DNA of 64,000 nucleotides, taken from positions 51,346 through 115,345 of the forward strand of contig ADNK01002688.1 in the NCBI GenBank assembly GCA_000320545.1, written 5' to 3'. Position 1 is the stretch's first letter. The number at the start of each line of letters is the position of its first letter. The position numbers and the translations under genes are program-made. This DNA is from Bigelowiella natans CCMP2755 (lineage: Eukaryota; Protista; Cercozoa). Positions 22,468 to 64,000 of this stretch are shown here, piece by piece. The notes beneath the pieces were generated by a model, which saw only the letters and a list, made by a program, of their open reading frames with translations, had not been told where the DNA came from and did not search any database.

Positions 22468-25212
22468 CACTCACCTGCGTCTACCAGAGGAAAGCCTGTT
22501 TGCCCTGTTTTCCAAGCTCTTACTCGAGCACCATCATCATCGTTATACCACCGTTGTTGTTCGTATTGCATCCTCAACGACAAATCAGGTAGTTGCGGAA
22601 ACTTAAACAACATCCAATACGCAAGCTCACGCCACGCTAATCGCCTTAAGAAGGCCTTACACCGATGTGCCCCTCTCCTCTTCTTTGCTGCATGGTATCT
22701 GTGAGTCATTACAAAAATAAAACTAAATGAATAATTATACAAGGGCATTATTGTAGCCATAGTAATGTGTTGTCGCTCTCAACAAGAAAGAAACGATGAG
22801 TAGTACAACACACATTGAGAGCTATTATGTATTTGATAATAATACTATAATTACGTACACGGTGTTCGGGCTAAGTTGGCCAAAACGAATGTATGGAGAA
22901 ATGACAGCTGTATTGCTTTGATCCGCTCTATGTCGGTCCCTCCCTTCAAACTTGTAAATCCCCCCACTGAGGAACTTCTCGAGTGCTACATGAGCATCTT
23001 CTTCTGTAAACCCCCACGCTTCTTCGATCCCAAATGTCCAGTTAACTTTCTCTTTAATCCATATATCACGATGTTGCTTGGTGTTTTCTCCTCTCTCCCA
23101 CCCCCCCCCATTAATATTGCACTTAGATGTAGCATTAGACTTCTGCTCATATTTCTTATTTTGTTCAGTACATTCCATCTTCTCCACTAACCCATTGTTC
23201 TTTCTGATGTTCCTTGTTTTCTGGAATAATAGTGGTTTCTGGATTTTAACCCTATCTACGACCCTCATCAAGTTACCACCCGTGCCATTATCACGACGAT
23301 GTACTCTTCTATATATTCTAATCGGCTGCTGTACAAGATTTAGACTATCAATCCCATCAGAAAAAATGGGGTAGTGCCACTGTGTCTGTATCTTATCTTC
23401 TTCTTCTTTAACAGCAGCAGTAGGTATTGGCAAAGGCCTTCTTGGCTCCCCAAACCTATTAACAATCATTCATCAGGGGAAAATAAGGAAGTCACAACTA
23501 AGGAAATGTGGTATACGAATAGTATATTCTTAAGTTCTATGATAGGAATGTTTGAAAAACATCATCAATCATCATCATCATCATGATTATTGGCACTTAC
23601 TTGATGCAGCCTCTAAGATAAAATCCAACACTTCCAAATCCATGAGAAAGAGCACCAGGCTCCTTATCAGGATGTACCTCAGTTATCTCGTACAAAACTG
23701 ATCCTTGGAACAAGTGAACAACAACTGTTGTAGCAGTATTAGTGGTAGTAGTAGTAGTGCTTGACAAAGGAGGAGGAGGAGGTGGAGGAGAAGCAACGTC
23801 ACTACAAGAAGCAGCTGTGCTAACACTACTATTTAGGTTATTTATCTTCTTTTTTATCATCTGATTATGCTTTCTATTCCCCATTGATATGAAGGTGCTG
23901 CTAATGACTTTCTTTATGAGCTCATCTCTCTCCATCAGCCATGGCTCATAGGAACGGCAATAAAATAGTGCTTCAGCTTGGGTTTCCTTGATGATTTTTG
24001 ACAACATATTCAATGTACTCTCGTTTTTACTGCTATCACATTTTCTCACAATGAGCTTCAAGTTTAGTTTTTCCTTGAGATCATGTTCTAATCCACGAAG
24101 GGCATGATAAAGCCAACATCTACACGCTCCTCGAATCCCCCATTGATGCCCACATTCCTCCTCCTCGTTCCAGATAAAAACCTGATGGATGGTATTAATT
24201 ATCAGAACATATCGACATATTATTATTATGTTGTCAATGAGAATATAATTAAGTATTTGAAAAAACAGAGAATTATTCGGATATGAGAGGATGTAGACAT
24301 CGCTTTCATCATCATCGTCATCATCATCATCATCATCATCATCATTATCAGTATCAACAACAACAACAGCACCCGATAAAGTAGCCAGTTAACACAACGA
24401 AAATTGAAAACGTAGTAGCAGTTATCTCAAGCTACTACAGGAATAATTTGAGTGCATTTCTTGTCGTTATAAGCGGCAACCAACGCCTCGTTATCGAAAA
24501 GCCTAAGATATCCGGTCTTAAACCATAAAATTCCCACTTTTTCTGCGATCACGAGGAGGAAGAGGAGGAGAAGGAAGAATGGGAATACGACGTCAAACAC
24601 AGAGAACAAATTTATGCTCAATCATCATATAATAGCAATATAGTATTCGAGTGGATATCATCATACTAAGTTTTTGTTATCATCATGATACTTATACAAC
24701 ATTATATGCGCGCATGCACGATTACGTAGTACACAAAGTAGTAGTAGCACGCAAAACAGTATTAGTAGTATTAGTAGTAGCAATGACGATGTATTCTAAA
24801 ATAGTGTAAGTTGTGGTGTACTAGGTCGCTGCTGCAGCTGGATTTGCTTGCGCCATTTCTTCCTTCTCCTCCTCCTTCGACTACTACTACTAGTACTACT
24901 ACTAGTAGTAGTACTTTTCCGTGAGGACGAAGTATGAACGATGGTTGTTCCACCATGAGTAGGAGTGTTAACTACAAACTCCTTTTCATCATTATTAGTA
25001 GTACTAAAAGGAGGGGGAGGAGGAAGAGGAGGACCACCATCCTTGCTTTCACAAGTAGTTGTAGGAAGAGTAGTAGGAGTACCAGCAGCAGCAATGAGGA
25101 AGTCTTTTGAACCAGATTTAATTGTACCATTCATTCCATTATCGCCACAAACGTAGTCATTATCATTGCCATTATCATTATCATCATCATCATCATCATT
25201 TAATGTATCATC

Positions 25213-42423: not shown

Positions 42424-44107
42424 TCACAACCATTTGAGTACTCGTCTTTTTGAAATGAGTTTCCCATGTCCATCTTTAAACCTATTTTGCACCAACCAGA
42501 GCACATCTACTGCCGCTTGATCCGGAGTAGCTGCTTTTGAAACATCTTTAAACCAGGCCCTACACCGTTATCAAAACACAATGATTACAAATAAATCATA
42601 CCAACTCGCATAGAGTAAAATGTATGATTATAATTTCTGTGGCAGCACTAGCTGTTAGCATGAGCTGGTCACGCATTCTCTTGGTATCAGCACTACAAGC
42701 ATTCTTGTTATGATATCGTTATTCATAAATGGATACCTAGAGAGTTCTGTATCAATAAGGCCAGGGCATACTGCGTGAACAAGGACTTGATTTTTAATTA
42801 GTCTTATGTCCTGTGCTAATATCTTTGCTATAGCAACCTGTCCTACTTTTGATGGGACATTGATCCTGTGATTCCATAAAAGTAGTTATAATAATTTGGA
42901 CATGGAAGAAGAAGAAAGGAAGAAGAAGAAGAAGAAAATAAACGAGTTTCATTTAGTGATGATAAGTTATATACGAGGCATACTAGCATAAACCATATCA
43001 TCAGTTTCATAAAATATCTCATAAATACTATTCGTCAATTTTTTTCAAGAATAATCACTATCACAACACTATAATGACCACTCTGGCCAGCCTTTTTTAT
43101 CGTCGACCCTCGCCTAAAAAAAAAGGTGCAAATCTCGCCTTATTTATTAATTTCTTATGACTAAAATTGGGGGCGACTCACAATGTTTATATGACAGAAA
43201 TTTGAAATAGTGCGATAAACCTTGACATCCTCTATGTAATCAATCATCACTTTATCAATATCCTCAATTGTTTGTTTCTTGAAATCAAAGTAATGATGCT
43301 TTGACTTATCTAATCTGCTAAGAGCACCAAAGCTACTTGCAATGATGATAAAATGCGATCCAAAGCCCATTATGGGGGTAAAATACTTCGTCATCCGAGA
43401 TGTGCCTAGATTATTCGTGTTGACGAATGTAGTAACTTGTTCATGCTTTGGCATTCTTATATTCAACCGTGCTGCTGCATTGTGGATGACGATATCCAAT
43501 GACCCCTTAGCTTTAAATATGGCTTCTGCACATAATTTCACACTACGATCGTCCGAAACGTCACATAGTATTGGTTCAGCTATAAGCCCTACAGACATCA
43601 ACTCAGAGACCGCCTTCCGACCTGGAATGAGTTAATCATATCATAACGAATTATACTCTATTTTTTTATTTATCAATTAGGTGTAGTACAAAGTTTAAAA
43701 GATGATAAAATATCACTTGTACTTCATTTCATCATTTGCTAGTGATAGCAATCAACCTCTTTCAAAGTTTCTGACACCCATGTAGATTGTGCTTCCCAAA
43801 GGAAGAGATCTGCAGAGGCCTTTGACTAGAGCATACCCTAATCCTTGATTTCCTCCTGTTACGAGTGCAACCTTGCTTTCATGAACAATGTCTTTACTTT
43901 CGTCCTCGGACAATTCATCATCATCATCATCATCATCATCATCGTCGTCATCCACGTTTGTCTTTGAAACAGCAGAAGGGATTCGTCTAAGTTGCATAGC
44001 ATACCAAGCAACCACAGAGCGTCACCCAGCAACACCTTCCAGTATATAAGATTGTGAGCAACAAACCTGAAGCCCCCTGTACAGCATTTGGTTGGGCTGG
44101 TTCCCAT
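42424..44107 (-). CDS. Carbonyl reductase-like short-chain dehydrogenase (atypical), spliced
   Basis: MGTSPTKCC...|poly-D, then VALVTGGNQGLG (TGxxxGxG), CDVSD, HNAA, VNTNNLG, IASSFG, GWPEW|INVPSKVG and AVCPGLIDT. The last exon ends RVLKWL* at 42424. Confidence 0.88.
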
Positions 44108-44808
44108 GAAATATTTGAGATGATTTTTGCAGAGGGTGTCCTTTTTTGTCCTTCCTTCCTTCCTTATGTGTGCATGGGAAAGTAGTACGGAAAGTAGACC
44201 AAGGCTTATATCTAGTCGTAACTATGACAATGTCCTGCTATTTGCGAGTACGACGACTACGAACAATGTAAGAATAAGGATGCTCCTGACAACTGTAGTC
44301 GCATGTTCGAGCATGTACTTGAACCAGATGCAAAACACCACGTTTGGATGCAATGATCTCCCTTTTTCATCTGCGACATATGATCACATCCTTCCTTTGA
44401 GATCGCAGCCGAGAATCCTGAATCCGCCTTTTTTTTAGATTGATTTACGTTACATTGTCCACAAATAGAATAGAAAAAGCGTAGATCGGAGAAAAATCGC
44501 GTGTGCGCTAATGAATACAGGCAGCAAACTTTAAGCGACAACTAACTCCGCTTGGATCAACGTGTAAGTGCAAGTAGATCTAGATCTAGAACATCTGAAT
44601 ACTTCCTCCCCCAACCAAGCCAAGCCGCGGGTTAGACATCTAGTATATCATCATCATTGTAATCATCGTCTACACCCATCCAACACCGTTAACCGACTCC
44701 TCATAATTCATCACTTCAGTTCGAAGGTAGCGGCACCGCTCTAGGTCAGTGTTGATATCGGTGGGAGGCTTATTTCAACTGAAATTATTAAAGACAGCGT
44801 AGAACAAC

Positions 44809-46408
44809 ATGCTTGGGAGATGTCGGTTGTTCTCTCAAGCACCATCGTGGCATGAAATGGCAATGGGAAAGGCATTACTATTATTGGTTATGTGTTCCTG
44901 CGTTCCAACAAGAGGTGTTACTTCGTATGAAGACGTGCAGGTGGCCAAATACTTTTTCTTCCATGCTGTAAAGTAGTCAATTCTGCACACGAATTATTCA
45001 AATATGGCAATACATAATACTTCACAGGCTGGAGCAACGAAGATAAGCTCAGTAATTGAAGCGGTTCTTCAGGATCAGATGAAAGCCGAAGTACTTCAAA
45101 ACGAGTTTAATCAACTTCCTCGTTCACTTCAACCTCAAAGCGCAGAAGAAATCACTGCAAGAGGGTCCTATCCATCGCTATAATTTCAAAATCAATATCA
45201 TTATCTCTTCCTCCTCCTCCCTGTATATTATTATAGCCGATATTCCACATTTCAGGGCCGCTGCCATTGGACGTATATTTCGTGAGTATGAACAGTCTTT
45301 GCAGGCTCAAGCTAAGGTGACACTTTGTATTTACACACGCACACACACGCGCGCGCGCATACGCTTTTACACATTTACACTTATTATTCTTATGGATGAG
45401 TGCGTGTGTGTATTTGCGAAAAGAAGGGGGGGGGGGGGGGGGAGAGGGAGTCAGGAGGGAATGATGAGGCACAAAATAAATGACACAGCTCTTTCATTCA
45501 GGCTGTAACAGATGCATATTATTCAACTATGCTGACAAGGAGTAGCAGCACTCTTCTCTCGACAAGCTCAGATTTTTATGATATAGAAGAGAGTGCATCC
45601 CTGCCAGGAGGTTATCACAAATACAAATACATATACACCAACTATGATGCTCTTAAACTTGTTACGAAATCGTAATGATGAGTTGTTCCAACGACTAACA
45701 TTACCATACAAATAAGGCCTGAATTTTTCTTCAAATCTTGGAGTGAACTGCTCAACGACGTACAGCGGGTAATAATATCGCTATTATATCAACGTCAGAC
45801 TAGCCTCAAAGCAAATGCAGGACAAAACTTTGTGTTTTTGTTGATTTAGCAAATCAAATAATCTGGAAGGAGTTTTCATTTAGATAATTAGCTGACTGTG
45901 TTACAATATCTTGATATCATATCATTGTCGTTATGATGTTAAATAGATATAAGAAGGCGTCGGTGGTCACTAATTCGGATTCAGAATTAGGTGTTTATGA
46001 TGATATATTTGATGGTAACTAGTAGTTGTGTTTTGTTAAGCACATCTACTTACCTAATCAGTAGCAATTGTGAACGTTAATAAACCTATTATTGCTTTAT
46101 CGTGCGGTTTTGTGTGGATACTAGTAATTGTATGCACCATCGAATAAGTTTATTGTTTTTGTGTGTTCTTTCTTCCTACTATTAATCACTGTAGGGTGGG
46201 AGGCAGCATATTCATCACCTCTCAGAAATCTGTGGATAGACCAATTTAGGTTGATATTTGGATATACAACAAAAATAACATGAACAACAAACACAACAAC
46301 AAGAAGAAGAGCCATATTTCCTGAACAGTGATTAGCTGACACACGTAAGACATGCATTTATTTTATCATTCTCTCCCTTTATCTCTCTTTATCTCTCTTT
46401 CTCATTAT

Positions 46409-46443
<35 letters not shown>

Positions 46444-47205
46444 TGATATGGTTTATCGTGTGATGGTATTATTGTTAGTTCTTCACTTAATGATGTTGTC
46501 TCATTCCAATACTTTGGAACTCCTTCTGGTATTATTATCATTCCATTCCATACAAATGTATGACTGCATATTTTGGTATACATAATATCTTGTGCTGTGT
46601 ACTTAAGTATTTTGAGAAGTGCATGTGTGTATGTGTGTGTGTGTGTGTAAGATAAGGAGAGAGAGAGAAAGAGTGTGTTTGGTATTGGTTTTTGGGTCCT
46701 TATTGTGATGATGACGTTTGTTGTTGTTTTTGTTTTTATTCTTTGAACCATGTCGTCGGTTTTAGTTTATTGCAAGTGATGATATGTGTTTTGATTTTTC
46801 CTTCTCCTCCTCCTCCTCCTCCTCTTGCAGGGGTATTATTCGTTTATCCGTATCAAGAATGGAGAGAACCGTATGATCCTAGAGGATCCCCTTGGTGAGA
46901 AGCGATCAAAAAGTTTAAAAATTATGTTATTACGACAATGAGAAATAGTGGTGTTCGCATATCAATAATGATAATAGATAAATAAATACTATAAGGTACA
47001 CAACAGCACTTGTTGGGCCGAAGAACTCTATTATATTAATTGATATATCACGTCAAGATAAACTTGCCATCAACAAAGAGGTATGAATGTATTAGTATGT
47101 ATGTGTGATGGTCAAGCTATACAAAATACCCTCAGGAACATCGTCATCATCATCATCATTATCATTATTATCATCATCATCATCATCGCTAAGATTAGCT
47201 ACTAA

Positions 47206-47247
<42 letters not shown>

Positions 47248-48196
47248 TTTCTACAGATAGCAAAGGCGATATTGAACACATTGAGTGTCCACGATTACGT
47301 TTCAGTATTTGCATACGGTTCCACGGTATTATTTATTTATTTGTTTATCATGCTACCACGCTTTTATTTATTTATTTATCATGTATTGCTTATTTATTTA
47401 TTTGGTTATCATGGTTCTCTCTCCAGCGGACCATTCAAAATACTGCAATCTTATCTTTCACACCCTCCTCGCCTCCTCACTCATATTGTTTGCTTCAAGT
47501 CACTCACTTTTCGTCGTCAATTCATCATCTGTTTTTTGGTAACATTGTGATCTTCTCCTTCTCCTCTCTTATAGCAGCTGCAGCTGCTTTTAGCAAAACA
47601 CATCATCATCATCTACTACTACTATTAGTAATAATATCAATGATAATAATAATGATTAGGTGACGAAGCTAGGGCCTTCAAGTTGCATTGGGACTAATTT
47701 ATTATCTCGTGCATCTCAAGCCTACATCTCAACCACTATTGCCCAGATTGAAGTTTTACAACATTCGGAAGGCCTTAATGTATGGTGACCTTTCGTCGTG
47801 TTATGATAAATACTACTACTACATTATTTTCTTTTTAGGAACGACGATTTTACAAATGATACTTTTTTGGTATTTTCAGGTGAAAGAAGCATACACTGCT
47901 GCCTATGAGGATGGGTACTCTACAAACTGCGGCACCAACATTATCATCAATATTCAAGGAAGTAAAGATTCTGCTAATAGTGCTTTAAAGAGAAGGTTCT
48001 CTGCAATACAAAAACTAATATTCGAGCAGCAATAGTATTAATAGTAGTAGTAGCGGTTGTAGTTGGAAAAGGAAAAGGCGGAGAAACACCATCTTAAACA
48101 GAAGTTGAGTGACTAACATTATCAGAACCAATTTAATAATTGTAGCGTATGATGGTGTGTTCAAGTAATACTCATCTTTACCTTACCGTTGTAGTA

Positions 48197-48230
<34 letters not shown>

Positions 48231-48930
48231 TGTGATATGATTATTGACACCTGCTGCATTATCGATGAATCTTGTTTGGTTATTAGTGGTTGGAGAGCAT
48301 TTACCTTTGCCACTGCAGCTGGGGCTGGATCAGAGGATGTGAAGTTTATCTGTGATAGTGATGGATGGTATGAGGAACTTGATAGAGGCTCCACTGAAGA
48401 AATTGTTTACCAAGCAATCTCATTTTACAACTACATCTTTACCCAAAACCAACCATCATCTGTGGCAAATTCCGATGAGGCAGTCTCGTACACATATGGC
48501 AAGGTGGTGGTTAATCCTCTTCTCAACTTAGTAGTAGTAGTAGCCCCTAATTAGTAATTCCACACACTCAGTACGTATCCCAATAATAATAATAACAATA
48601 ACAATTACAATTACAATTACAATTACAGGGAAGTTAGGTTGTTAGATTAGTTTGTACTGTTACTTTTGTCGTTTTTTGTGTGGAGAATGGGAATGAATTT
48701 GATCATATTAAAAGTCAACGGACAACGATATGCTGTTAGTCAATCTTGCTGTACTTCTTAATTATTGATGGAGAAATATCTGATATAATGATGATGATGA
48801 TGATGATGATTCTTATTGTTATTATTATGATGGTTGGCAAATAAACCCTCCTCTACTCTAAATTAGGGTATTCGCTCAATGTATCACAACGTCGATTCTT
48901 TAGGGTGGATCATCCATCACTAATTATTTT

Positions 48931-48966
<36 letters not shown>

Positions 48967-49317
48967 TATTTATATTTATATATGCACATATATTCTTTAT
49001 TTACCTTAGCCATCTTATTTTATGACCATCAGTCATCATTTTGTATGTACGTACGTACGTACGCTGATAATAATAATAAATGCTTTTTGCAAATTCTGGT
49101 CGTCTGTAACAATATTCAGATATTTGCTGACAATGTCAAAGGCAGTGTGGACATCGGATAACACCTTGTTAGGTTCTTATTACATATAACAAGTTAAATC
49201 ATGTCGCTCTTTCTTCTTGATTATAAGATGATATACAAATAGGTGTCTTGGGAGTTGATATTCGTATGGCAAATATAAAGGATGTTTTGGATAACATGCA
49301 AACGGTACTTACATAAC

Positions 49318-49349
<32 letters not shown>

Positions 49350-49585
49350 CAGTAGTAACATTTGTTCCCGCATGAATTACAATCTATTAACGCCTATAGA
49401 GAGAGGAGGAGGAGGAGGAGGAATCAGCAACACTATACTGATTTCATTTGTTTTTTCGAGTTCTTAAGACGATGATGATGGCTTAATAATAACGAAATTC
49501 TTGTCGTACATTCATTCTGTAGTCATTATCTCTCTCTCTCTCTTTCTCCCTCTCTCTCACACACACGCACACACACACACACACG

Positions 49586-49658
<73 letters not shown>

Positions 49659-50089
49659 CATACGCATTGGCAAGTGAATGCATACTTAAACAAGCACAAC
49701 TCAGTATTTTGCTGATACTCATCGATATTTTCACTAACAGCCGACACCATAACCATGATGATCCTCCCACTAGCATGATCTTACTTATTCCTACTACATA
49801 ACAGGGTGTGTCATTCCCTATTCTATTTTCCAACAACGGAGAGACGTTGTATCACCCTGAGCAAAGCGAGTACAAGAAAACCTTTCTTGTTGGAACAGGT
49901 AGTGGTGCCCATCATTGATCGATCATATCGCCATCATCACTATCTCTAAGTTGCTGTATAACAACTCTTATTATTGTACTCATAATTGATCATATTTCTA
50001 CTGACAATTTTGCTTTATCGTTTACTAAGGCCGTGAGATATCTGACTATGAGAGCTTTGATGTGAATAGTAATTTCATGACCAAGGTGG

Positions 50090-50120
<31 letters not shown>

Positions 50121-50222
50121 GTCAAAAGCCATCTAGTTTGTACATATCGGATATATCATCATCAGCATCATCATTATCATTATCATTATGATGTGATAAT
50201 GATGATGACACACAGGCATGAT

Positions 50223-50261
<39 letters not shown>

Positions 50262-50416
50262 ATATTTTGGTCCTTCTCATCCTCCTCCTCCTCCTTGTCG
50301 TCCTTCTCTTTCATAGGTTAGAAAGCCAATGCTTCAACTCAATTCAGGTGTGGATTGTGTGGATTATTGTATTATTGTGTGGATTATTTATCACTTCATA
50401 TTTTACACTATAAGTT

Positions 50417-50451
<35 letters not shown>

Positions 50452-51603
50452 CAAGGGTGTCTATGTTTCTATTTTACTTCAAGGGAACATTGGATTATTG
50501 GTGAATAGACCTCTTCCAAAAGGAGATGCTACACAGGAAGGTGTTGCTCTTTCATTTATCAATGTTATGACTATTGTTAGTACGTGTCTTCTACTATCCG
50601 TCGATGATAGATGACCAATCGTCATAACCCTAAATGAATCAAACATATACACACGACTACTGTAAAATACTACATCGATGATCCTTATAAATGAATACAT
50701 AAACATATAGTTCCTTAGTCATTTATTCTTGTCTTCTTATTGTAGATTTATACACGATGTTGGCAGTAGTAATTTATCACTCACTCTTCTCCTCCTCCGT
50801 GTTATTATTTGATTACTGTTACTAGGATTAGACACGATACCGACTTTCACATATTACGTATGGATTCGGTAATGTTTGTGTGTGAGTGTGTGTGATATGT
50901 GTTAATTGATAATGTTCTTGTGGTTTTAAAGGCTTGCGGGAACTCCTTATAAATTATGTATGACGATTGGAGAAAAGGATTTGCAGCTAAATTCTCAGTA
51001 TCCTCCTTTCGAGGTAGGTAGTAGGGTTAGTCAGTCAGTGAGTAATTTTTACTTAATATACCAGTCAGTCAGTGAGTAATGATTACTTAATATACCAGTC
51101 AGTCAGTGAGTAATGATTACTTAATATACCAGTCAGTCAGTGAGTAATTTTTACTTAATATACCAGTCAGCCAGTGAGTAATTATTACTTAATATACCAG
51201 TCAGTCAGTGAGTAATGATTACTTAATATACCAGTCAGTCAGTGAGTAATGATTACTTAATATACCAGTCTGCCAGTGAGTAATGATTACTTAATATACC
51301 AGTCAGCCAGTGAGTAATTATTACTTAATATACCAGTCAGCCAGTGAGTAATTATTACTTAAAATATACCAGTCAGCCAGTGAGTAATTATCACTTAATA
51401 TACTAATACCACCATAATTACTATCATTATTATTGTGTTGTTCCTGCTGTGTTTTGCTGAGTTTGATTTTGCTGTCTGACATTATTGATGATACCTACAC
51501 ACCAATTGACTTAGACACGGGATGTATACCTAGTAACCGATCATATTCTTCAAAATGCTGCAGATATTAACCAACAAGATTTCGCAAATCACGTACTACT
51601 AAG

Positions 51604-51636
<33 letters not shown>

Positions 51637-51825
51637 GCTTCTATTACAATTGATCAAAGCAACAACAGCTCACCGCTGCTACATTAGATCGGCTACCACT
51701 ACCCCCATCACCACCACCACCACACTACTACTACTACTACTACTACTACTATAATAACATCCATTGCATTACATAGGGGGTAAATTTTACCGTGATTAAT
51801 GAAGGAAATTGTGCTGAGAACGGTA

Positions 51826-51861
<36 letters not shown>

Positions 51862-52114
51862 CTGTATGAAGTAGCAGTAATTCAAAAAACGCAAACAAAT
51901 CTAAGGCTAACCTAAGTCTTAAAAAAAAACAATGGAAATATAGAATGATGAATTGCCTATAAATATTCGTTGTTGATTGATTGATGGATTGATTGATTGA
52001 TTGTTACACGTAAAAGAAGAAGAAGAAGAAGAAGAAAGAAATGAAGTTATTATTGCCTCCATTGTTTGTTGTTTCTTTCTAATTATCGATTTGTATCACT
52101 ACTACTCACTACTA

Positions 52115-52151
<37 letters not shown>

Positions 52152-52738
52152 ATGCCCAACAAACAACACACTAATTCTTACCACCCCACCACTACCACCA
52201 CCATATAATACTCAGGAACGAATTTCATAAGAGCTAATTGTACAAGTCACCCACTTCGATACACTGGTTGTTGTTGTTGTTGTTGCTGCTGCTGCTGTTG
52301 TTTTTGTTTCATTGTTGCTGTTGTTGTCGAGTTTGCTTATTTTCATTGCTCTGAAAGATGATCTTCCTGTGTATCTCACTCTCTCCCTACCATCTATCTT
52401 CGGCCTTTTGAATCCATCCCAACAATGTTTCTACCTACTTCTTTTTTCCATATCTTTTATTGTGTAAAATTAAGATTTAAATGGTGTCTCGTATTATCTA
52501 TCTGAGAGTTGTTTGGTGTTTGGTATGATGTTGTTTATACTACTGCTGTTAACTTAGTCGATGCTGTGAGCCTAACCTCATCGGTATTACTAGTAGTAGT
52601 AGTAGTAGTAGTAGTTGATAGTGATAAAATTAATATATTTGAGAGGTGTGTATGCATGTCGAGAAGGAAAGGGAAGAACAACAAAGTTATTGTAATTGTA
52701 GCAGTAGGAAGAAGCTGCTTATCAATAGAAGAATGTGA

Positions 52739-52774
<36 letters not shown>

Positions 52775-53275
52775 GTGATGGTGACAAGAATCTGATGGAG
52801 ATCTATTAAATGTGATCAACAAACAACAGAGTGTACATTTGGCACCAAAATGTTTCCTCTCTGCGACAGAAGCTCATAGGTACTAAATACTTGGATAGTA
52901 TAAGTAGTAGTAGTAGTAGTAGTTGTTGTTGTTGTTGTGGTAGTACCAACAGATACTGCCCCAGAAGTATAATTGATATTGGTTGTGAATACTAGCTGTT
53001 GGTGATGATGATGAGAAATAATTAATTTTTCAATCAATTTGTTATTTTCATAAGATTAATTATTATAGAATAGTAAGAAAAGGGTATACATCAAATCATC
53101 ATCATGTTGCTCTCATGATTTTCCTCCTCCTCCTCCTCCTCCTCCTCCTCCTCCTCCCACTCAAAGTTACACATGGAGCAACGACGACGTATACGGACTT
53201 CGTAAATTCATTAATCAAGAGAGAAATGCATCAAATGGCCCATATCCATCACTCGGTATGATCACTACGACGACG

Positions 53276-53306
<31 letters not shown>

Positions 53307-53397
53307 AGTCTAAATGCTGTTTGTTTATTGTTAACAACTTGCTGCAAGTAGTAGTAGAAGTAGTTGTAGAAGAGAAACAAACCACTACGATAAACCT

Positions 53398-53436
<39 letters not shown>

Positions 53437-53976
53437 GTGTTTTATCAACTTCTTTATATATGGTCATCATCTGACACAGCGACAAAAATAATATAGGGGA
53501 TAAATGCCTAAAGACTGCACGATTGACTCGTGGGTGGTTTAGTGAGATCATCAATGCAGATCATAGCAACACAGTATGGGTGTATTTCGGCTCTAGGGAT
53601 GGTACTACTACGTACACCATCATTAGTAGAAGAATGAACACATCAACCTCTATGGCACTTTGAAACTACTAAAGAAGTATGTTGCTTGTTGTCTACTATG
53701 TTTTCCCATACACGGTGCATGTTAAGTATTTGGTGGTGGTGGCGGAGTCTTTTTTAATAGTACTATCAGCAGCACTAAGTAAGTAATAATATTTTGTAAT
53801 TGATTCTTGATGAACACGGAGGTAATACAGTTAGTTAACATCATACTTTACATCATTTCTTCACCTAACAGAAATTAGTAGCATTGTTTTTAAATATGTC
53901 CTTCTTCATCATCTTCATCATCATCTTCTTCTTCTTTTTCTTCTTCCTATTCGTTCTATCTACCCACCATTACTAC

Positions 53977-54008
<32 letters not shown>

Positions 54009-54131
54009 CTCTCGCACAGGAACTTTGACTCAATACCCTGCAAACTATTGGGGGAACTCTTATGATCCTACTCGCAGACCTTGGTATTTTAGAGCCCTGG
54101 CAGTTGGTGGTACAAATAATACATGTATATT

Positions 54132-54181
<50 letters not shown>

Positions 54182-54804
54182 TTATGATTGGAGTTACTGT
54201 CATTGCTAGTAGCTGGTTAACGGTGGGTGTGTGCAGACGCAGATGGATTGTCTTTTTTCGGATAATGATTATACAACTCCTACAAACAAACAAACAAACA
54301 ACTACTACTACCATCTTCGTAGGAAAAATAGCATTTAGCACCCCATATCAAGATGCAGGAGGAGCTGGTAGTAAAAGAAGAAGAGTGATAATGGGGATTA
54401 GATGGATGGATATGTTGATCCAGCCAACATGAACATGACGACGAAAAGAATGATGATGATGATGATGATCAATCACACTAGCAGTGATGGTGATAGCGAT
54501 AAGAAATTTTGATTGAAAGCAATAATCGTCTCCACAATTAATATGTTCAAACTTCAGCACAATACTACATACAATACTACATACATTTAGTATTTGTGAA
54601 TAGAATTTGGTTGTTTCTTCTTCTCATAATGCTTGTTGTGTTTAATGATAAATAGGTCTTTTAATTACAGTGTCAATAGGTAAAAGAACAAAAAACAACT
54701 CGATTTGTTCCAAACATCATACGATACATGATGATGATGTGATAAGATAATATCAATGATTGTTTTTTCCCATTTATGCTTTTCGCTTCCTCTTCTTCCA
54801 TCTC

Positions 54805-54842
<38 letters not shown>

Positions 54843-55809
54843 CTTGCAGCTATAAATCACAACTCAAGCCCAAAGAATACCTCTACTACCGAAATAGTTG
54901 ATGAAAGAGTAGCAGGAGTTATTGGTAACAATAGTCAGCAATTGTAGAAGTGCTAGTCGTGAGTGATGATGAAAAGTAGGAGAAGAAAAAGCCATACATG
55001 ATGATGATGATGATGATGATGGTGATGAGAACATAATATCGATAAAGAATCAAACCCTTTCTTTTGATTGGCTGCCCGTTGTGTACATTCGTTCGCACTG
55101 ATTACCATAAGTATGAGTAGTAGCATTAGTATTATTAGTAGTAGTATTAGTTGTTGTTGTTGTAGTCTTGTTTAACATCAATGGAACACTCTCATTGGTT
55201 TTATTTCATTTGTCACTCATTATTAAACCACCACCACCACAAGCAGCAGCAGAGTGTACGTTGTAGTACATGTGCTACTACTTATCCAATGATATCTAAT
55301 ATCACTTCTTTAGGTTATGACTATGTATATCCGGTTTTTCATAATTTTACCTTTAATTATGCCAACTGCTCAAACGCCAATGTCCAGGTATTATTGTTAT
55401 CATTCTTCTTCTTATTATTATTATTATTATTATTATTTTTAATTATCATAATCTCTGAGTGATTGTTATTTATTATCAGAGTGTGCTACTAATTACAAGT
55501 CATGTAATTTTCCTTGCTAGTCAGTTTGTATGTTATTACGGATATCAGTAGTACACTGATGAAAAATGTTCTTTATTTAATTGTTAAGGTGCTACCACGA
55601 TGATGATAATGATGATGAGATTATTCTCTGTTTTTTTTTATTTCCCCCCCCCCCCCCCTAAACTCTAAGGACCATTTGAATACAAGTTCACAGCCTATGT
55701 GTTTTCTCGTTGATACTGCCGGTACTAACAAAATCACAACATAACATAATTGTAAATTGTATATATCCTGTCGTCGTTGGTTGTTTGTTTGTTCCACAAC
55801 TTACTTACC

Positions 55810-55850
<41 letters not shown>

Positions 55851-55969
55851 GGAATGCTACTCACGCATAGTGATTTCCTCATAACTGCTTCTGAGGCTAC
55901 AGATTTGGGATATGTCACAGGTAGTAGTAGTTAGTAGTAGTAGTAGTAGTAGTAGTAGTAGGTAGTATT

Positions 55970-56004
<35 letters not shown>

Positions 56005-56102
56005 AGGCACCATTGGAACATGGCCAATTGAGAACATATTCTTGGGCAAGAAGGAACCTCCACTAGCATCTGCATTGATTGATGTCCGTAGTTGTACGTT
56101 TA

Positions 56103-56141
<39 letters not shown>

Positions 56142-56917
56142 GAGGGGGGGGGGGGGGGGGGGAACAGAGAGAGATCACAGTAGTGGTTTGAGGGTGTGTT
56201 ATGATGCTGCTATATGAGCGGAAAAAATTTAAGAATAGTTAGTGCTATAATTCAAATGCTGCAAAGTAGCAGTAGTAGTAGTAGTAATAGTAGCACTAAG
56301 GACTAAAAGTCTAGCTATGACGTTGTGCAAGCATTACAAATATCATCACTTCTCTTCCATCCATGTGTCAATCTATTTTATGTTGCGAATTATATCATCA
56401 TCTTACTTTGTATTTTGTTGTGTTGTGTGGTTGGTTGGTGATAGTATTATGTGGAACGGTGTAAGATTGATTATAGTTATATCACTTGTAACTTCATATA
56501 TCATCAGATTGGGTTTCTTGTACCCAAATCCAGCTCAAATAGGTGCTATCTATTATTATGAGACTACTATCGTGTTTACAACGATGTGCTTATTGAATTG
56601 TTTGGTGCCCTCCATTATTTATTATCTTAACCAGAGATAAAACAGCTACTTTGTCGTTTTATGAAACAAACGACACTGTTCTTGATGCTAATGGAGTGTT
56701 ACGTGGAGGTCAGTAGATTCGTCGTTTGTAGCTATTACCACAACAAATATGTTGATATTACATTCCAATTGTATATTGTACATTTTGTTTCAATTCTGGG
56801 AGGAATTGATTGCGTGTATGTTTGTTTGTGCGACGTAGTCGCATTTGCCTCAGCAGCATCTGTTTTCATATATTGCGAATATAAATCTTAGATTGTAGGA
56901 GTTGTACCTGCATATGA

Positions 56918-56970
<53 letters not shown>

Positions 56971-57643
56971 ATACTTGAAAATGGTTATATCGTTCACTGT
57001 TTCATGTTGAATATAGGAGATATTATCTCAACAACATCTTGTGCATGGCAAGGAAATTGGAGCATAATTCAAGTATAACAACAGACAACAATAACAACAA
57101 CAACAACAACAACAACAACAACCTATTGGTGCATTATTTCGCTGGTCATTGTATTATTTTGATGCTAATTTTGGAACTACGACTACTACTACTACTACTA
57201 CTACTACTGATGATGATAATCATCATTATAGCGAATGAATAAAATCCAGCTTACAATAGCAACGACATTATCCTCTTATAGTATTATCCAGCTCACAATA
57301 ACAACAACATTACATTCTTGATAGCAGCAGCCTAATAGTTTGATTACTCTGTAATTCTTGTTAGGTTCCCAGAACGAATGCTTATGTATTGGTTGTGGAT
57401 GGATATAAAAGAGGTTGGTTGGTGCTTGTTGTGAATACTTATAGCAGCAGCGCCAGTAGTAGGCAGCAGCAGTAGTAGTAGTAGTAGTAGTAGTAGTAAT
57501 AGTAGTAGTAGAGCTTTGGTGGAACCGCAGCACACTATTATCATCATCATCATAGAGTTTATTCTTTTCACATTACTCGTATTCTTGTACTGCTGAATTG
57601 TTCTTTTCATATTCCTTGTATTCTTGTACTACTCTACACAAAC

Positions 57644-57680
<37 letters not shown>

Positions 57681-57849
57681 ATGAATCCCGCACTACTACT
57701 ACTACTACTACTACTACTACCCTCAAACAATAATCACATTCAGGAAATCTTAGTTTATGCCCGTTGGTCAAACCTACCGATTTGGTAGTGATCCCCGCAG
57801 TAGTGATAATAATGATGATCAGGCAAAGATATGATACTTCTGAGACAGC

Positions 57850-57889
<40 letters not shown>

Positions 57890-58217
57890 GCTATTGATGG
57901 TTTGCTCTACTACTCGATTGTTTTGAACACAACATCAACAACAACAGCAACTACTGCTACTACTACTATTCCTAATACTATTACTATTGTCATTAAGGTG
58001 TCTATCCCCATATCGTACTGTCCAACTACGCATGATAAAGGCGCGTCTTCATGTGTATCACGAGAAATAGCAGACGTCTACTATCTGGAAAGTATGTATA
58101 TAATTTAAATTAATAGTTTTTACTAATAAAAAGCAATAAGAATGATGATGAAATCATGGAGGCGTGTGCATTAAAAAGTAGTAGGTACAATGATATTGGT
58201 GTTTGATGGTGCTGTTA

Positions 58218-58252
<35 letters not shown>

Positions 58253-58544
58253 ATAGTAGTGAGAACAGGAGCGTGTGTGTATAGCACCAGTATCAGTTTT
58301 GCCATAGCCGTAAAATGTTACGGTATGGATAATGACGGTGCTTATTTGTTGTTTAAATTGTAGTAAGTCACATTATTTACTCTATTTTTAGTTTTTATCC
58401 ATAAGCATCATCATTATTATTTTGTTCATTCGTCAATGTGTTGTATGTGTTGTTTAGAATTCAAAACAGCTGAAGGAAGTTGTAAGGTTTTCAACTGGGT
58501 ACTACTGCTATACTAATTACTATCGTATATTACCTTCTGAGTAT

Positions 58545-58577
<33 letters not shown>

Positions 58578-59072
58578 CACTAATTACCTTTGCATACCAT
58601 CTTTCTGATATGTGCATATATGAAAAAGGTATCTTAAGTGTGTGGGATGCTACCACTTATTTCCTAGATATATTGAAAGACTTCTTGTTTTTGTAATTAT
58701 TTGCTTCGTACAGATCCATGCATCTTCAAATATTGGCAGCTTTGTGATAACGTTGTCAGCGATAGGTGGATAAATGATTTGCTCTATCTGCCTAATTTAT
58801 TCACTTAATCGGCATTACCATTGTCCAAGTATTTAGACTGCCGCTGTGATTTCAATTTCTAATAATAAATTCATCATGATATCAAGGGTGTTTGTACTCT
58901 TTTTTCAGTCATCTTCTTCTGTCATGGAATACATATAATTTTTTATTTTTCTCTATTTTTCCTTTTTTACTTCCTTCCAAAGGCATTGCGATTACATTAC
59001 TCCTCATAGCCTTCCTCGGTACTACTGACTGACTGACTGACTACTACTACTACTACTGTGTCACTACCAATA

Positions 59073-59159
<87 letters not shown>

Positions 59160-59437
59160 TCAAACCTCATGCACACATATCAATACTACCTAAACTATTA
59201 GCTCGAATTTGCTATCCGATTTGATAATTTCGTTGTTATGTAATTAATAGATTTTCTCTTTCATGGTTCTTTATTGTGGGACAACAATATGAATTTATTA
59301 TTTATTGATCTATAACCATTATGTATGTGATTGCCAGCCTACAATCGCACGAAGTATGTCATAAGAGCTACTGCGCCAACATTTGGGTTAGTCGCTACTT
59401 AAATGATGTCTAATGCTTGCTGGATCCAACTACTGCA

Positions 59438-59468
<31 letters not shown>

Positions 59469-61867
59469 TCGATCTACAAGATTCGCTTCAATGGATGACG
59501 ATTTGTTTCAAATATTATGCCCTGATATATGTATATATGTATGTTTGTATTTAGCTACGTGATGTGTGCCGGGGCTCTTCTTACGTTTATCTTCCTCATT
59601 CTCCTAATTGGAAAGCCAAACAGAAGGTAATAATGATAATGATGATGATGATGATGATGATGATGATGTAATGATGAGAGATAGAACGAACAAGCATTTA
59701 TCATAAATCGAAGGCAACATTCAACAAAATATATAAACTATTTTTAAACCCCCTTTGGATTTGTAATTATTACATGTTTAAAGGCTGACTACACGGCAAT
59801 AATGATTATATCCATTGCATTCAACATCTCATCCTCATTAATGTGTTGGTTTATCATCAGCATTTGCATTGGTCGTGTTTGGTTGGGGACATTGGGTAAT
59901 ATGAGTAAATAGCAACTAATTATTGTTCATTGCTCCGTCTTATGTAATTTTGTATTCGCACAACGGTTGGAACATTGTTCAATATTTTTATTTGCGGTAT
60001 CAGCATTGTTTTATGGTTTTCTGGCAATGATAGTAGTAGTAGATGTGTACAGGTGTAGTAAATATAATAAAATATGTTTTTTGTTTCATCTAGGTTTCAT
60101 ATTGATGTTTATGGGATTGATCATTCGGTCCCTTAGAATCTATCTTATCTGTGCCTCGAAAGGTAGTCTTTTTACAATAAACAAGATTTAAAAAGAAGGA
60201 GGAATGATACTGAAAATAATTACAAGTATTATACCATAAGAAATTCTTAAGCAATGTACTTGTATTTTCGGGCCAATTAATTTAATGACAAATAAGTAAC
60301 TACAAGATTTTCATTCTATTTAGGGAGACGCCGAATGAAGAAGCAAATAATAACGGATTGGTAAGTAATTGCAAGTTTGTAATACAATTTCACATGCACG
60401 GATAATTTAGCGTGGGGTTTGAGTTGAATGTTAGCTTTATTGTTATCACTTTCCTTTCTTGACATGATAAAGCGTTTTAATCAGCGTTTTGATCTACTCA
60501 ATTCTAGGTACCTGATGCGGTACATCGGCGCTTTTTGTTTCGTCCAGACGGTTTTGGTTACACTTTGGGTACTATGTGTTTACATTCCTTTTACATTTTT
60601 TAAACGAATGCAAATATGTGGATCAATTACTTGCTAATGCTGATCGAGTATATGTTAATCTGATTCATTGCACATTAGTCAACTATTGGAAACCTCCGCG
60701 ATAGGAATCAAAAGGGAGATGATGTATTATAGACACAGCACGCACACATGGACAACATGATCTCATGAAAAAATAATAACGAAGTGGGGGGTTTTGCAAT
60801 TATATTGTTGGAAGCTAAAACCGCAACGTAATAACTGCTATGCCACGCCAAGCAAAAATAAAGTACATTGTTGCCATCCATCTATCGTTTCCTAAAAAGG
60901 AGTAAGTGTTCTTCTTTTTCTACCACTCTTCCAATCAGGACCTTGAGTACCAAGTCATTTGTGAAAGTGACTTTGACATTGTTTGGAACTGTTTACTCTA
61001 TGCTCTAGATGCCTCAATTCTTTGCTGGGTACTATTGGCAGTGATCTGAATATAGTATTAGGAGGAGGAGGAGGAGGAGGAGGAGGAGGAGGAATGTGTA
61101 GAGTAAGAGAGAGGCGGGGGAGGCATTTTGTCATTCTTGAATTTCCACCAAAAAATTCAGTATTTTATTTATTTACAACATCAAATGTAGGGCATATATT
61201 TAGCTATCAAAACAAGGGATGTGTCTCTAAAGGAGTTCAACGAATCAAAGCATATTGGATTGGTATTAACAAATACGTGACGCTACATCTCAATTGTCGT
61301 TTCTGATACGCATCGCTCTGTGGCCTACGTTACTATTGTTGCTGTTTTTTATGAAAGGCAATTTACAATGTCACTATCATTGCTCTAATTACTATTCCAT
61401 TAATGGATGCAATAAAAGTCCAAGAGGTAATAGCTAGATAGTCGCAACAGATGAGAATGTGGTACTTTCCTTTCCCTCCTGATAATTAGTTTGATCAAAT
61501 TGTTTTCATTCCATATTCCACAGTCGACCCGCGTTTTGGTAATATCCATGGCGACTTTTGTGTCTGTCATCGCTACGTTGGGTAAGTGATAGAAATGGCA
61601 CGCGACATTAAGATGTAAAGTGTCACTCAACAAGAGTGTTATATATCATCCAATGCTAACCGCTTGAAATTTTGGATGCTAGGCATTGTGTACATCCCGA
61701 AGATGAGAAATCTACATTTAGAGGCTGCAGATTTCAAATTTACAAATAAGGCCAAAAAATCCATTCAAGAATTCAAAATGAAGCGATTGGGAGAACGTAT
61801 GTCTTCTGCAGCTGATAAACGTATTTCCTCTGACATGTCAGGTAGAATCAGTCGTTTTGATAGATGA
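44809..61867 (+). CDS. Class C (GABA-B/7tm_3-like) GPCR with alpha2delta/CACHD1-like ectodomain (signal peptide, VWA inserted in dCache-1, second dCache); dozens of exons
   Basis: Signal peptide (MAMGKALLLLVMCSCVPTRG), then YDPRGSPW|Y..GPKNSIILIDIS (Cache into VWA) and GVLGVD. The second Cache reads YFGSRDG|TLTQYPANYWGNSYDPTRRPWY, STPYQDAGGAG, VAGVIG|YD and VPRTNAYVLVVD. In-phase exons continue into the 7TM: VIRATAPTF, CIGRVWLGTLGFILMF..IIRSLRIY, LAIKTRDVSLKEFNESKHIGLAIYN and IVYIPK. Confidence 0.88.
51029..51404. repeat. Intronic 34-bp minisatellite, ~11 copies
   Basis: Unit agtcagtcagtgagtaatgattacttaatatacc starts at 51029, 51063, 51097 and onward to 51371, with small variants. Confidence 0.95.
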
Positions 61868-62049
61868 ATCGTTTCTTCCAATCGTCATCCATTCGTTACA
61901 AAATCCGGACATTGTTTTGTGATGCATTGAATAGACATGAAAAAGAATAATTCATCGGCGTCAGTGGTGGAAACGCGGAACACGGTATTCCTAAAACTGT
62001 GTGATTTGATTTAAACAAATGGTTTTGACAATGCAATTTTTTTGGAATT

Positions 62050-63708
62050 TGAGTGTATGAGTGACATTGTTCTGGCATTTTCAATCGGTTTCAGAATCTC
62101 AATGGAAGCATGACACAGGGACAATGTAAGAGTCTTCGATGAAAAGTCAACATCATTCGATTTTGTTGATGAATTTGTTGTTTTGTCTCATCTGTGCAGC
62201 AGTGGCAACAAAGTGTCTGGATTCCGATGCAACGAACGTCAATCCTTTGACGAGGTGATCATTGTGGTTTCCAAAATGTTTCGTGACCAGATCTAGCATT
62301 GCATGTCGAATTTCATCACATGTTTTTGGTGTGTTTGAAGTGACCATTCTGCAATTGGTTCGATGAAATCTCCTGGTGGCGTTCTGAACAGGTGATGCAA
62401 TCATCATCAGAAATGTTCACATTGAAGCATTTCAGTTTGTCGTTTTGTCCATCAGCAATTTGGCTTTGTAAGAGTTCTTCTGTCACGTCCTCCAAGTCAT
62501 CAGTGTCGTCATCAACGGAAAGCGCATTGTGCGTTGAAGTGACGTTGATCCTCAGCGACGTGTTCCATTTTTGTTCCCAATTGGCACTTGCTGTGTCAGC
62601 TTGCAACATGGGCTTTGTTGAATCCCGCGTTCTGAGCCAAAATCGCAATGTCGTTGATGTCAACTAGTCAACCTACTGCGCACACAACCCACTGAGCGTT
62701 CACATGCGAACAAAGCTCGATGTCATCAGAGAAACACAAGTCCGTCAAACCTGTGATGAATCGCCAGAATGTGCATTTGGAAGCTTTTGCGCGCGACCAA
62801 GCGCGTCATGTGATGCAATGGACATTGGATTTGCTCGCATTTCTTTGAAATTTTTCGTGCATGTCACACTTGGTCAAACGCACACGCAAAAGCATTCAAA
62901 GTGTGGCAGAGAACAAACGCGCAGCGTGCATCCGCCACACAACGGGTGTGAATTTTCACACTTTGAGGCCTTGAAATTGGAGATTTGGGTCAACATTCCG
63001 GTCATTTTTTCAGGTTTGGCCATCGGACAAGTTCTGATGACTTTTCTTTGACCAACTGCAACTGCCTGCTGCTTCAAAGCGCGTCGCAAATGAGCGCTGC
63101 ACTGTTCACAACCCCGTCATTGCCGGGTTTGACGGACTTGTGAAAAGAAAACAGAACGAATGAGACGGAGGCCACTTTCTGGCTTGTCAAGTGAAGTGCG
63201 ACGTGTGCCACAGTGACACGGTGAAATTGTTGACGCACTCCCGCCCTGGCGCCGATGAACAGATGCAATTGATTGTCTTGCGCACCTGCACGCGTTTGCA
63301 ACGCTCGATCAAACTGCCATTGATCGAGTGGGAAGGGAAACAGCATGCGCCATGCAGAAGGAACAACACAGAGACTTGTGAGTCCACATGCGTGTGCGCG
63401 CATGAAAACTTCATGTGCACGTTGCAAGCAGACAGCACACACGTGTGAGGACTTGCAAGTCCATGCAACAAGTGACGTTCAAAGAACGTGTGACAAACAC
63501 CAAGCTGATGGCCAATCCTTTTTGCACGCGCGCACATCCGCGTGCTGCACAATGAAACACAGTTGCGCAACCCAAAACCTCAAATCATCCCTCTTTGCCT
63601 CCTCCTCCTTCTCCTCCTCTTTGATTCGTGAGTTGCTTCTTGACTTTGTTGTCGTGAATTGTTGTTCCAAAAATCTTTCAAAGTGAGGTGGACGTGCAGA
63701 CAAACCAG
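62050..63708 (-). pseudogene. Subtelomeric TpA-free relic of a probable protein-coding gene
   Basis: No TA found by eye in 62676-63714. Minus-strand ORF pieces read like protein (SVDDDTDDLEDVTEELLQSQIADGQNDKLKCFNVNISDDDCITCSE; IKEEEKEEEAKRDDLRFW) but contain no Tyr and are frame-broken. Confidence 0.5.
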
Positions 63709-64000
63709 TTCGGGTTAGGGTTAGGGTTAGGGTTAGGGTTAGGGTTAGGGTTAGGGTTAGGGTTAGGGTTAGGGTTAGGGTTAGGGTTAGGGTTAGGGTT
63801 AGGGTAAGGGTTAGGGTTAGGGTTAGGGTTAGGGTTAGGGTTAGGGTTAGGGTTAGGGTTAGGGTTAGGGTTAGGGTTAGGGTTAGGGTTAGGGTTAGGG
63901 TTAGGGTTAGGGTTAGGGTTAGGGTTAGGGTTAGGGTTAGGGTTAGGGTTAGGGTTAGGGTTAGGGTTAGGGTTAGGGTTAGGGTTAGGGTTAGGGTTAC
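63709..64000 (+). repeat. Telomere (TTAGGG)n, ~48 units, G-rich strand running toward the end
   Basis: Near-perfect TTAGGG array to the window end. The first unit is a TTCGGG variant, there is one TAAGGG variant at 63805, and the window ends TTAC. Confidence 0.99.

What the first reader, a model, noticed from the sequence alone, without database searches (positions are those of the whole stretch)
44809..61867. alpha2delta/CACHD1-type ectodomain fused to a class C GPCR 7TM
Seen: exon phases are continuous from the Cache C-terminal strand (VPRTNAYVLVVD, 57365) through a Cys-rich linker into all seven TMs and the stop at 61867. The 7TM has class C hallmarks: KTR...FNESK.IG..IYN, a TM3 Cys with an ECL2 Cys, and YIPK. 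Established: alpha2delta and CACHD1 are membrane-anchored (GPI or single-pass) Ca-channel partners with VWA inserted in a double Cache. Class C GPCRs normally use a Venus flytrap, and GPR158/179 use a Cache domain without VWA. Inference: this is a distinct receptor class linking the alpha2delta sensor module directly to G-protein signalling in a protist.
Basis: partly seen in the sequence, partly recalled or inferred. Interest (0 to 1): 0.88.

Follow-up and report, generated by a model that had tools for sequence, protein, structure and literature searches.

The report
Alpha2delta-type sensor fused to GPCR
This marine alga makes one protein that joins the whole outside part of an animal-type calcium-channel helper subunit (alpha2delta/CACHD1), including a complete amino-acid-binding motif, to the membrane part of a GABA-B-like receptor; I found this combination described nowhere, and it could show whether that module can itself pass on a signal.

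Summary
Confirmed, with a corrected end. The genome is Bigelowiella natans. The gene has 64 exons (44809-62471, all 63 introns GT-AG) and encodes 1424 aa; the stop at 61867 lies inside intron 59. Single spliced transcript contigs from several studies join the ectodomain to the membrane part, and a complete MMETSP protein matches the model with 5 substitutions. The JGI annotation splits the gene in two, which may explain why it was missed. The ectodomain is CACHD1/alpha2delta-like (E 1.7e-29): VWA with a degenerate MIDAS, and two dCache domains. The second dCache keeps the full amino-acid motif; the first lacks its Arg. The 7TM is class C, closest to GABA-B rather than GPR158. A 42%-identical orthologue from an unnamed organism has the same fusion, with its second dCache most conserved (60%). 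Most likely it is an amino-acid-sensing class C GPCR; binding and coupling are inferred, not shown. Cache-plus-7TM receptors are known (GPR158/179, a diatom protein); a VWA-double-dCache version was not found in the papers searched. Its range is unknown because the homologue searches were insensitive. The scan had no such finding on other DNA.

The parts
44809..62471 (+). Whole gene: 64 exons, 63 GT-AG introns (63-501 nt, median 204), CDS 4275 nt, 1424 aa
   Evidence: matches P0012 and transcript contig L016
44857..44916 (+). Hydrophobic N-terminal segment (aa 17-36), probable signal peptide; translation may start at M1 or M17
   Evidence: hydropathy; aligns with the CACHD1 N-terminus; no signal-peptide predictor was run
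44926..47007 (+). Long N-terminal helices and first half of dCache 1 (aa 40-238, approximate), with YDPRGSPWY, where the motif Arg is replaced by S233
   Evidence: alignment to CACHD1 and alpha2delta-1; motif
47008..48440 (+). VWA domain inserted in dCache 1 (aa 239-415, approximate); MIDAS degenerate (DISRQ for DxSxS, IQG for TDG)
   Evidence: phmmer to the alpha2delta-1 VWA region, E 0.003 over 166 aa; below Pfam VWA detection
48441..51013 (+). Second half of dCache 1 (aa 416 to about 609), with the motif Tyr (Y443) and Asp (D473) positions
   Evidence: PF02743 match in P0001
53167..57405 (+). dCache 2 (aa 693-995, approximate), distal and proximal modules
   Evidence: PF02743 54 bits, over the cut-off of 45; CACHD1 E 8.9e-17 and PctA E 2.6e-8
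54061..54087 (+). Intact N-terminal half of the amino-acid motif, YDPTRRPWY (Y772, R777, W779, Y780); Y796 follows in exon 54323-54367 and D838 in exon 55314-55387
   Evidence: motif as defined in PMC8915833
57406..58720 (+). Cys-rich linker (aa 996-1058), four Cys (1003, 1019, 1030, 1051) conserved in the orthologue
   Evidence: spliced continuity; fold not resolved (pLDDT about 33)
58714..61703 (+). Class C seven-helix domain (aa 1060-1311), exons 46-59
   Evidence: PF00003 168 bits, positions 4-251 of 251; GABA-B best by sequence and by fold
61704..62471 (+). Ser/Thr-rich cytoplasmic tail (aa 1312-1424): rest of exon 59 to 61841, then exons 61935-61984, 62095-62125, 62200-62254, 62341-62391, 62456-62471
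   Evidence: P0012 C-terminus mapped to the window

Best explanation
A cell-surface class C GPCR whose ligand-binding part is an entire CACHD1/alpha2delta-type module instead of a Venus flytrap. Shown: one transcript and one protein; domain identities; an intact amino-acid motif in dCache 2; a degenerate MIDAS; a canonical class C 7TM; G-alpha genes in the genome. Inferred: a free amino acid or close derivative binds the distal pocket of dCache 2 (Y772/R777/W779 for the carboxyl, Y796/D838 for the amino group), the change passes through the disulfide-rich linker to the 7TM, probably in a dimer as in other class C receptors, and a heterotrimeric G protein is activated. A use in sensing nutrients or prey in a marine alga is a further inference.
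For: Single spliced transcripts. CACHD1 E 1.7e-29 and GABA-B E 4.5e-24 on one protein. The pocket aligns residue for residue with PctA and CACHD1. The same fusion is in a 42%-identical orthologue once a 71-nt retained GT-AG intron is removed. All pocket residues are invariant there, and distal dCache 2 is the most conserved region: 60% against 34-39% for the N-terminal part, VWA and linker. The 7TM keeps the TM3-ECL2 Cys pair, basic residues at the cytoplasmic end of TM3 (RSLR), the acidic residue at TM6 (FNESK) and the TM7 PK; PMC3727952 lists these as class C features, the charged ones needed for GABA-B activation. The genome has many G-alpha genes (96 exon-level matches). The lost MIDAS argues against channel docking.
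Against: No binding or signalling data. Some class C 7TMs with these motifs do not activate G proteins themselves (GABA-B1, GPR158; my own knowledge). dCache 2 may lie some way from the membrane, and no confident ectodomain or linker model was obtained, so the coupling path is unmodelled. Only two species are in hand.
Confidence: 0.6

Rival explanations
1. GPR158-like non-canonical receptor: dCache 2 binds an amino acid, but the 7TM and tail act through an RGS protein or a partner receptor rather than as an exchange factor for G-alpha.
For: The only studied Cache-type class C receptor, GPR158/mGlyR, works with RGS7-Gbeta5 (titles cited in PMC12716839). B. natans has 39 RGS proteins (PMC3971589).
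Against: The 7TM scores far higher to GABA-B (87 bits) and mGlu7 (67) than to GPR179 (46) or GPR158 (40); the fold search ranks GABA-B first. The activation-related charged residues are kept.
Confidence: 0.17
2. A channel partner: the ectodomain works like alpha2delta/CACHD1 on a four-domain voltage-gated channel, and the 7TM ties that channel to G-protein control.
For: The ectodomain is the whole alpha2delta/CACHD1 module, and no second copy was detected in the genome. Four-domain voltage-gated cation channels are present. CACHD1 also lacks a full MIDAS (DHGAS) yet modulates channels (PMC8915833).
Against: MIDAS is lost in both orthologues, and VWA is among the least conserved parts (39%). 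The module predates its channel role and serves a kinase in streptophytes (PMC8915833).
Confidence: 0.1
3. A GPCR for another ligand: the pocket binds a non-amino-acid small molecule, or the receptor is triggered by a protein or surface ligand at VWA or dCache 1.
For: dCache 1 keeps W, Y and D but lacks the Arg in both species, a pattern that also marks amine-binding dCache domains (10.1101/2023.04.06.535858); the full amine motif was not tested. The ectodomain is large and has 14 N-glycosylation sequons (first model).
Against: The dCache 2 motif is complete and the most conserved part; PMC8915833 reports that this motif binds only amino acids and derivatives in prokaryotes.
Confidence: 0.11
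4. Artefact: two neighbouring genes, as in the JGI annotation, joined by chance phase or by chimeric assembly.
For: JGI models 81044 (594 aa) and 90697 (804 aa) split the locus. Support is from contigs; the raw-read run had almost no coverage.
Against: The JGI split falls inside the ectodomain, not before the 7TM: model 90697 itself joins dCache 2 to the 7TM. Contigs from separate studies and pipelines are collinear with the genome, and another species has the same fusion.
Confidence: 0.02

Closest known systems
CACHD1 (PDB 8s7c) and alpha2delta-1
   Same: Signal peptide, long N-terminal helices, VWA inserted in dCache 1, second dCache, Cys-rich stalk. As in CACHD1, the amino-acid motif is in dCache 2 and MIDAS is degenerate (PMC8915833).
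   Different: Ends in a full class C 7TM and a 113-aa cytoplasmic tail, not a single helix or a GPI anchor.
GABA-B receptor (GABBR1/2)
   Same: Best sequence and fold match for the 7TM (E 4.5e-24; Foldseek E 2e-11), same motifs.
   Different: No Venus flytrap; a roughly 1020-aa VWA-double-dCache ectodomain instead. Partner subunit unknown.
GPR158 (mGlyR) / GPR179
   Same: Cache-fold amino-acid sensor, then a Cys-rich linker, then a class C 7TM (PMC12716839).
   Different: They have one Cache domain plus an EGF-like domain and no VWA. Their 7TMs score much lower than GABA-B's (40-46 against 87 bits), which suggests a separate fusion; no tree was built.
Diatom Cache_1-7tm_3 receptors (T. pseudonana TP_7830)
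   Same: Cache plus class C 7TM in a SAR alga (PMC3251606; PMC3727952; Atlas cluster of 730 aa).
   Different: About 730 aa or so, too short for the roughly 1020-aa module; no VWA reported. I could not fetch the sequence, so the relationship is untested.
Streptophyte VWA-dCache_1AA Ser/Thr kinases
   Same: The eukaryotic VWA-dCache module fused to a signalling output (PMC8915833).
   Different: Output is a kinase; that paper names no GPCR fusion in its main text (supplement not held).

Membership tests
Class C GPCR (7tm_3) | Seven-helix domain over the PF00003 cut-off, full length | tested here: met
   168.5 bits against 33.5, model 4-251 of 251; seven helices in the model, pLDDT mostly 80-95
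Class C GPCR (7tm_3) | TM3-ECL2 Cys pair, basic residues at the TM3 end, acidic residue at TM6, PK in TM7 | tested here: met
   C1128, C1216, R1149, R1152, E1256, P1310-K1311; features as listed in PMC3727952
Class C GPCR (7tm_3) | Dimerisation and ligand-dependent G-protein activation | not testable with these tools
   G-alpha genes are present; no functional data
GABA-B / mGlu subfamilies | Venus flytrap (ANF_receptor) ectodomain | tested here: not met
   No PF01094 match; GABA-B and mGlu hits cover only aa 1058-1366
alpha2delta / CACHD1 family | VWA inserted in dCache 1 plus a second dCache | tested here: met
   Collinear matches to CACHD1 (E 1.4e-35 by profile) and alpha2delta-1 (E 1.1e-17); VWA region E 0.003; VWA is under the Pfam thresholds
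alpha2delta / CACHD1 family | Single membrane anchor (GPI or one helix) | tested here: not met
   Continues into seven helices on the same transcript
alpha2delta (1-4) | Intact MIDAS and amino-acid motif in dCache 1 | tested here: not met
   DISRQ/IQG here and DLTNN/IQG in the orthologue; motif Arg replaced by Ser/Thr
alpha2delta / CACHD1 family | Association with a voltage-gated calcium channel | not testable with these tools
   Four-domain channels exist in the genome; interaction unknown
dCache_1AA amino-acid sensors | YxxxxRxWY ... Y ... D motif | tested here: met
   dCache 2: Y772, R777, W779, Y780, Y796, D838, all kept in the orthologue; the Y-to-D gap carries a short insertion (41 aa here, 33 in the orthologue)
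dCache_1AA amino-acid sensors | Measured amino-acid binding | not testable with these tools
   No binding data; no confident model for docking
GPR158/GPR179 | GPR158_179_EC single Cache plus EGF-like domain, and a 7TM of that clade | tested here: not met
   No PF22572 match at E up to 1; 7TM scores 40-46 bits against 87 for GABA-B

The most novel reading that the evidence does not exclude
An undescribed branch of class C receptors in which the complete CACHD1/alpha2delta module is the agonist-binding domain. Amino-acid binding at the dCache pocket (the motif that binds gabapentinoids in alpha2delta, here in dCache 2 as in CACHD1) would directly switch on a G protein, showing that the module is a working allosteric sensor in eukaryotes, and that Cache-to-7TM coupling arose separately from GPR158.
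Probability: 0.45. Interest if true: 0.8.

Novelty: new variant of a known kind. Interest (0 to 1): 0.66.

Why it matters
PMC8915833 states that the function of dCache_1 domains in eukaryotes remains unknown. In alpha2delta and CACHD1 the pocket has no direct output to measure. Here evolution has wired the whole module to a GPCR, so a standard G-protein assay can ask whether amino-acid binding to a CACHD1-type module produces a signal. It also adds an ectodomain type to class C receptors: a 2025 survey found Cache domains in no non-metazoan receptor of its opisthokont-centred sample (PMC12716839), and the earlier diatom report has no VWA. It would be a concrete candidate nutrient receptor in a rhizarian alga known for a rich G-protein toolkit (PMC3971589).

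Tried and rejected
My joined spliced model was not sent to any database search. Exons were searched by reference, later searches used proteins returned by the tools (P0009, P0012), and the joined model was used only inside scripts for local comparison. Exon-wise Pfam found only 7tm_3 in one exon. PF08399 on the genome found nothing. Three word-based homologue searches returned only the B. natans cluster and P0009; they missed even animal CACHD1 and GABA-B, so they say nothing about range. Two metagenome scans found no relative. A single-sequence fold of the ectodomain failed (pLDDT 30.6) and was not used. Five other B. natans 7tm_3 loci were only 22-29% identical in the 7TM, and no second ectodomain copy was found; intron-rich paralogues could be missed. 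Two of my first exon guesses (3' end of exon 6, exon 27) were corrected by transcripts. Paper searches found no VWA-dCache-7TM description; supplements of the two key surveys were not held. InterPro and EukProt architecture searches could not be run.
Full report
Setting. The window ends in a TTAGGG telomere array from about 63712. The assembly has 91.4 Mb in 3736 contigs, and proteins from this locus carry Bigelowiella natans JGI and EukProt names, so the organism is the chlorarachniophyte B. natans. Genes here have many short exons between microsatellite-rich introns.

The gene. I built an exon model from the sequence and corrected it with transcripts. The final model has 64 exons from 44809 to 62471, 63 introns all GT-AG, and 1424 codons without an internal stop.

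One transcript. Contigs of three RNA runs from three studies were laid on 54000-59990. In X1 and X5 one record runs from the exon with YDPTRRPWY across the last Cache strand and the Cys-rich linker to TM3; X2 gives the same joints in two records. A JGI transcript contig (L016, 4840 nt) covers the gene from about 44598 to 62740 with 60 of 63 junctions exact, one SNP and two retained introns. A complete MMETSP protein, P0012, equals the model but for 5 residues. The reference annotation splits the locus into models 81044 and 90697, which may be why domain surveys missed it. The caveat is that these are assembled contigs; the one raw-read run had only 5 reads here.

Domains. P0012 matches CACHD1 (E 1.7e-29) and GABA-B receptors (E 4.5e-24) in non-overlapping parts. 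A two-sequence profile of the ectodomain aligns collinearly with CACHD1 (E 1.4e-35) and alpha2delta-1 (E 1.1e-17). The VWA is divergent: it escapes Pfam but aligns with the alpha2delta-1 VWA over 166 residues at E 0.003, and its MIDAS is lost (DISRQ, IQG). dCache 2 passes the Pfam cut-off and aligns with PctA and CACHD1 at the pocket: Y772, R777, W779, Y780, Y796 and D838 form the amino-acid motif of PMC8915833. dCache 1 has Ser in place of the Arg. This is the CACHD1 pattern. The 7TM scores 168 bits on PF00003, folds as seven helices, and is closest to GABA-B by sequence and fold. GPR158 and GPR179 score much lower.

An orthologue. The longest exon found P0009, 41-42% identical over the whole ectodomain. 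Its contigs come from JGI sample 3300017015, organism not given. The called protein stops after TM1, but removing a 71-nt retained GT-AG intron gives one frame of 1220 aa that runs through TM5 to the contig end. All pocket residues and the four linker cysteines are kept; distal dCache 2 is 60% identical against 34-39% for the N-terminal part, VWA and linker. The fusion is therefore old enough for much divergence, and conservation is concentrated on the amino-acid pocket. No second ectodomain copy was found in B. natans.

Mechanism. The most likely reading (0.6) is an amino-acid-sensing class C GPCR: ligand binds distal dCache 2, the change passes through the disulfide-rich stalk, and the 7TM activates a G protein. 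The anatomy is shown; binding, transmission, dimerisation and coupling are inferred. The genome has many G-alpha genes (PMC3971589). Rivals are an RGS-linked receptor like GPR158 (0.17), a receptor for another ligand (0.11), a partner of the four-domain channels that the genome also encodes (0.10), and an artefact (0.02).

Comparison with what is known. It belongs to class C by its 7TM, but to none of the GABA-B, mGlu or GPR158 subfamilies by ectodomain. Its ectodomain is built like CACHD1, but it fails the single-anchor test for that family. Precedents exist for each half of the idea: GPR158/179 couple one Cache domain to a class C 7TM; a diatom receptor with Cache_1 and 7tm_3 was reported in 2012-2013, and the Atlas has a similar 730-aa diatom cluster; streptophytes fuse VWA-dCache to a kinase. 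I found no paper with the whole VWA-double-dCache module on a GPCR, but supplements and InterPro could not be checked.

Limits and verdict. The range is unknown: the homologue searches missed even known animal relatives, and the metagenome scans were blank. The ectodomain could not be modelled. Verdict: a real, expressed, conserved and apparently undescribed receptor architecture, a new variant of a known kind, interest 0.66.

Noticed in passing
window 63712-64000: TTAGGG telomere array (reads GGGTTA on +); the gene ends about 1.2 kb from it, so it is subtelomeric.
   Followed up: no
window 51029-51403: A 34-bp minisatellite, 11 copies, 95% matches, inside intron 23 of the gene.
   Followed up: partly
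window 43161-44015, minus strand: Short-chain dehydrogenase gene (adh_short) head to head with the receptor gene, starts about 0.8 kb apart.
   Followed up: partly
window 22825-24061, minus strand: Exons that look like a photolyase/cryptochrome by eye (SPYIRFGQLS); no Pfam hit on the one ORF tested.
   Followed up: partly
window 60569-60678, 61582-61682, 62392-62455; L014:3293-3363: Retained introns are frequent in transcript assemblies of this gene and its orthologue (P0010 intron 53; L016 introns 58 and 63), giving truncated database proteins.
   Followed up: partly
L001-L012: Other class C 7TM genes in the genome have different neighbours in frame: L001 looks flytrap-like upstream, L002 has a Cys-rich and Ig-like stretch, L011 lies next to an RGS-like frame (by eye).
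   Followed up: no
L037, L038: Four-domain voltage-gated cation channels with unusual pore motifs in repeats III and IV (TLSGW, TGDAW).
   Followed up: no
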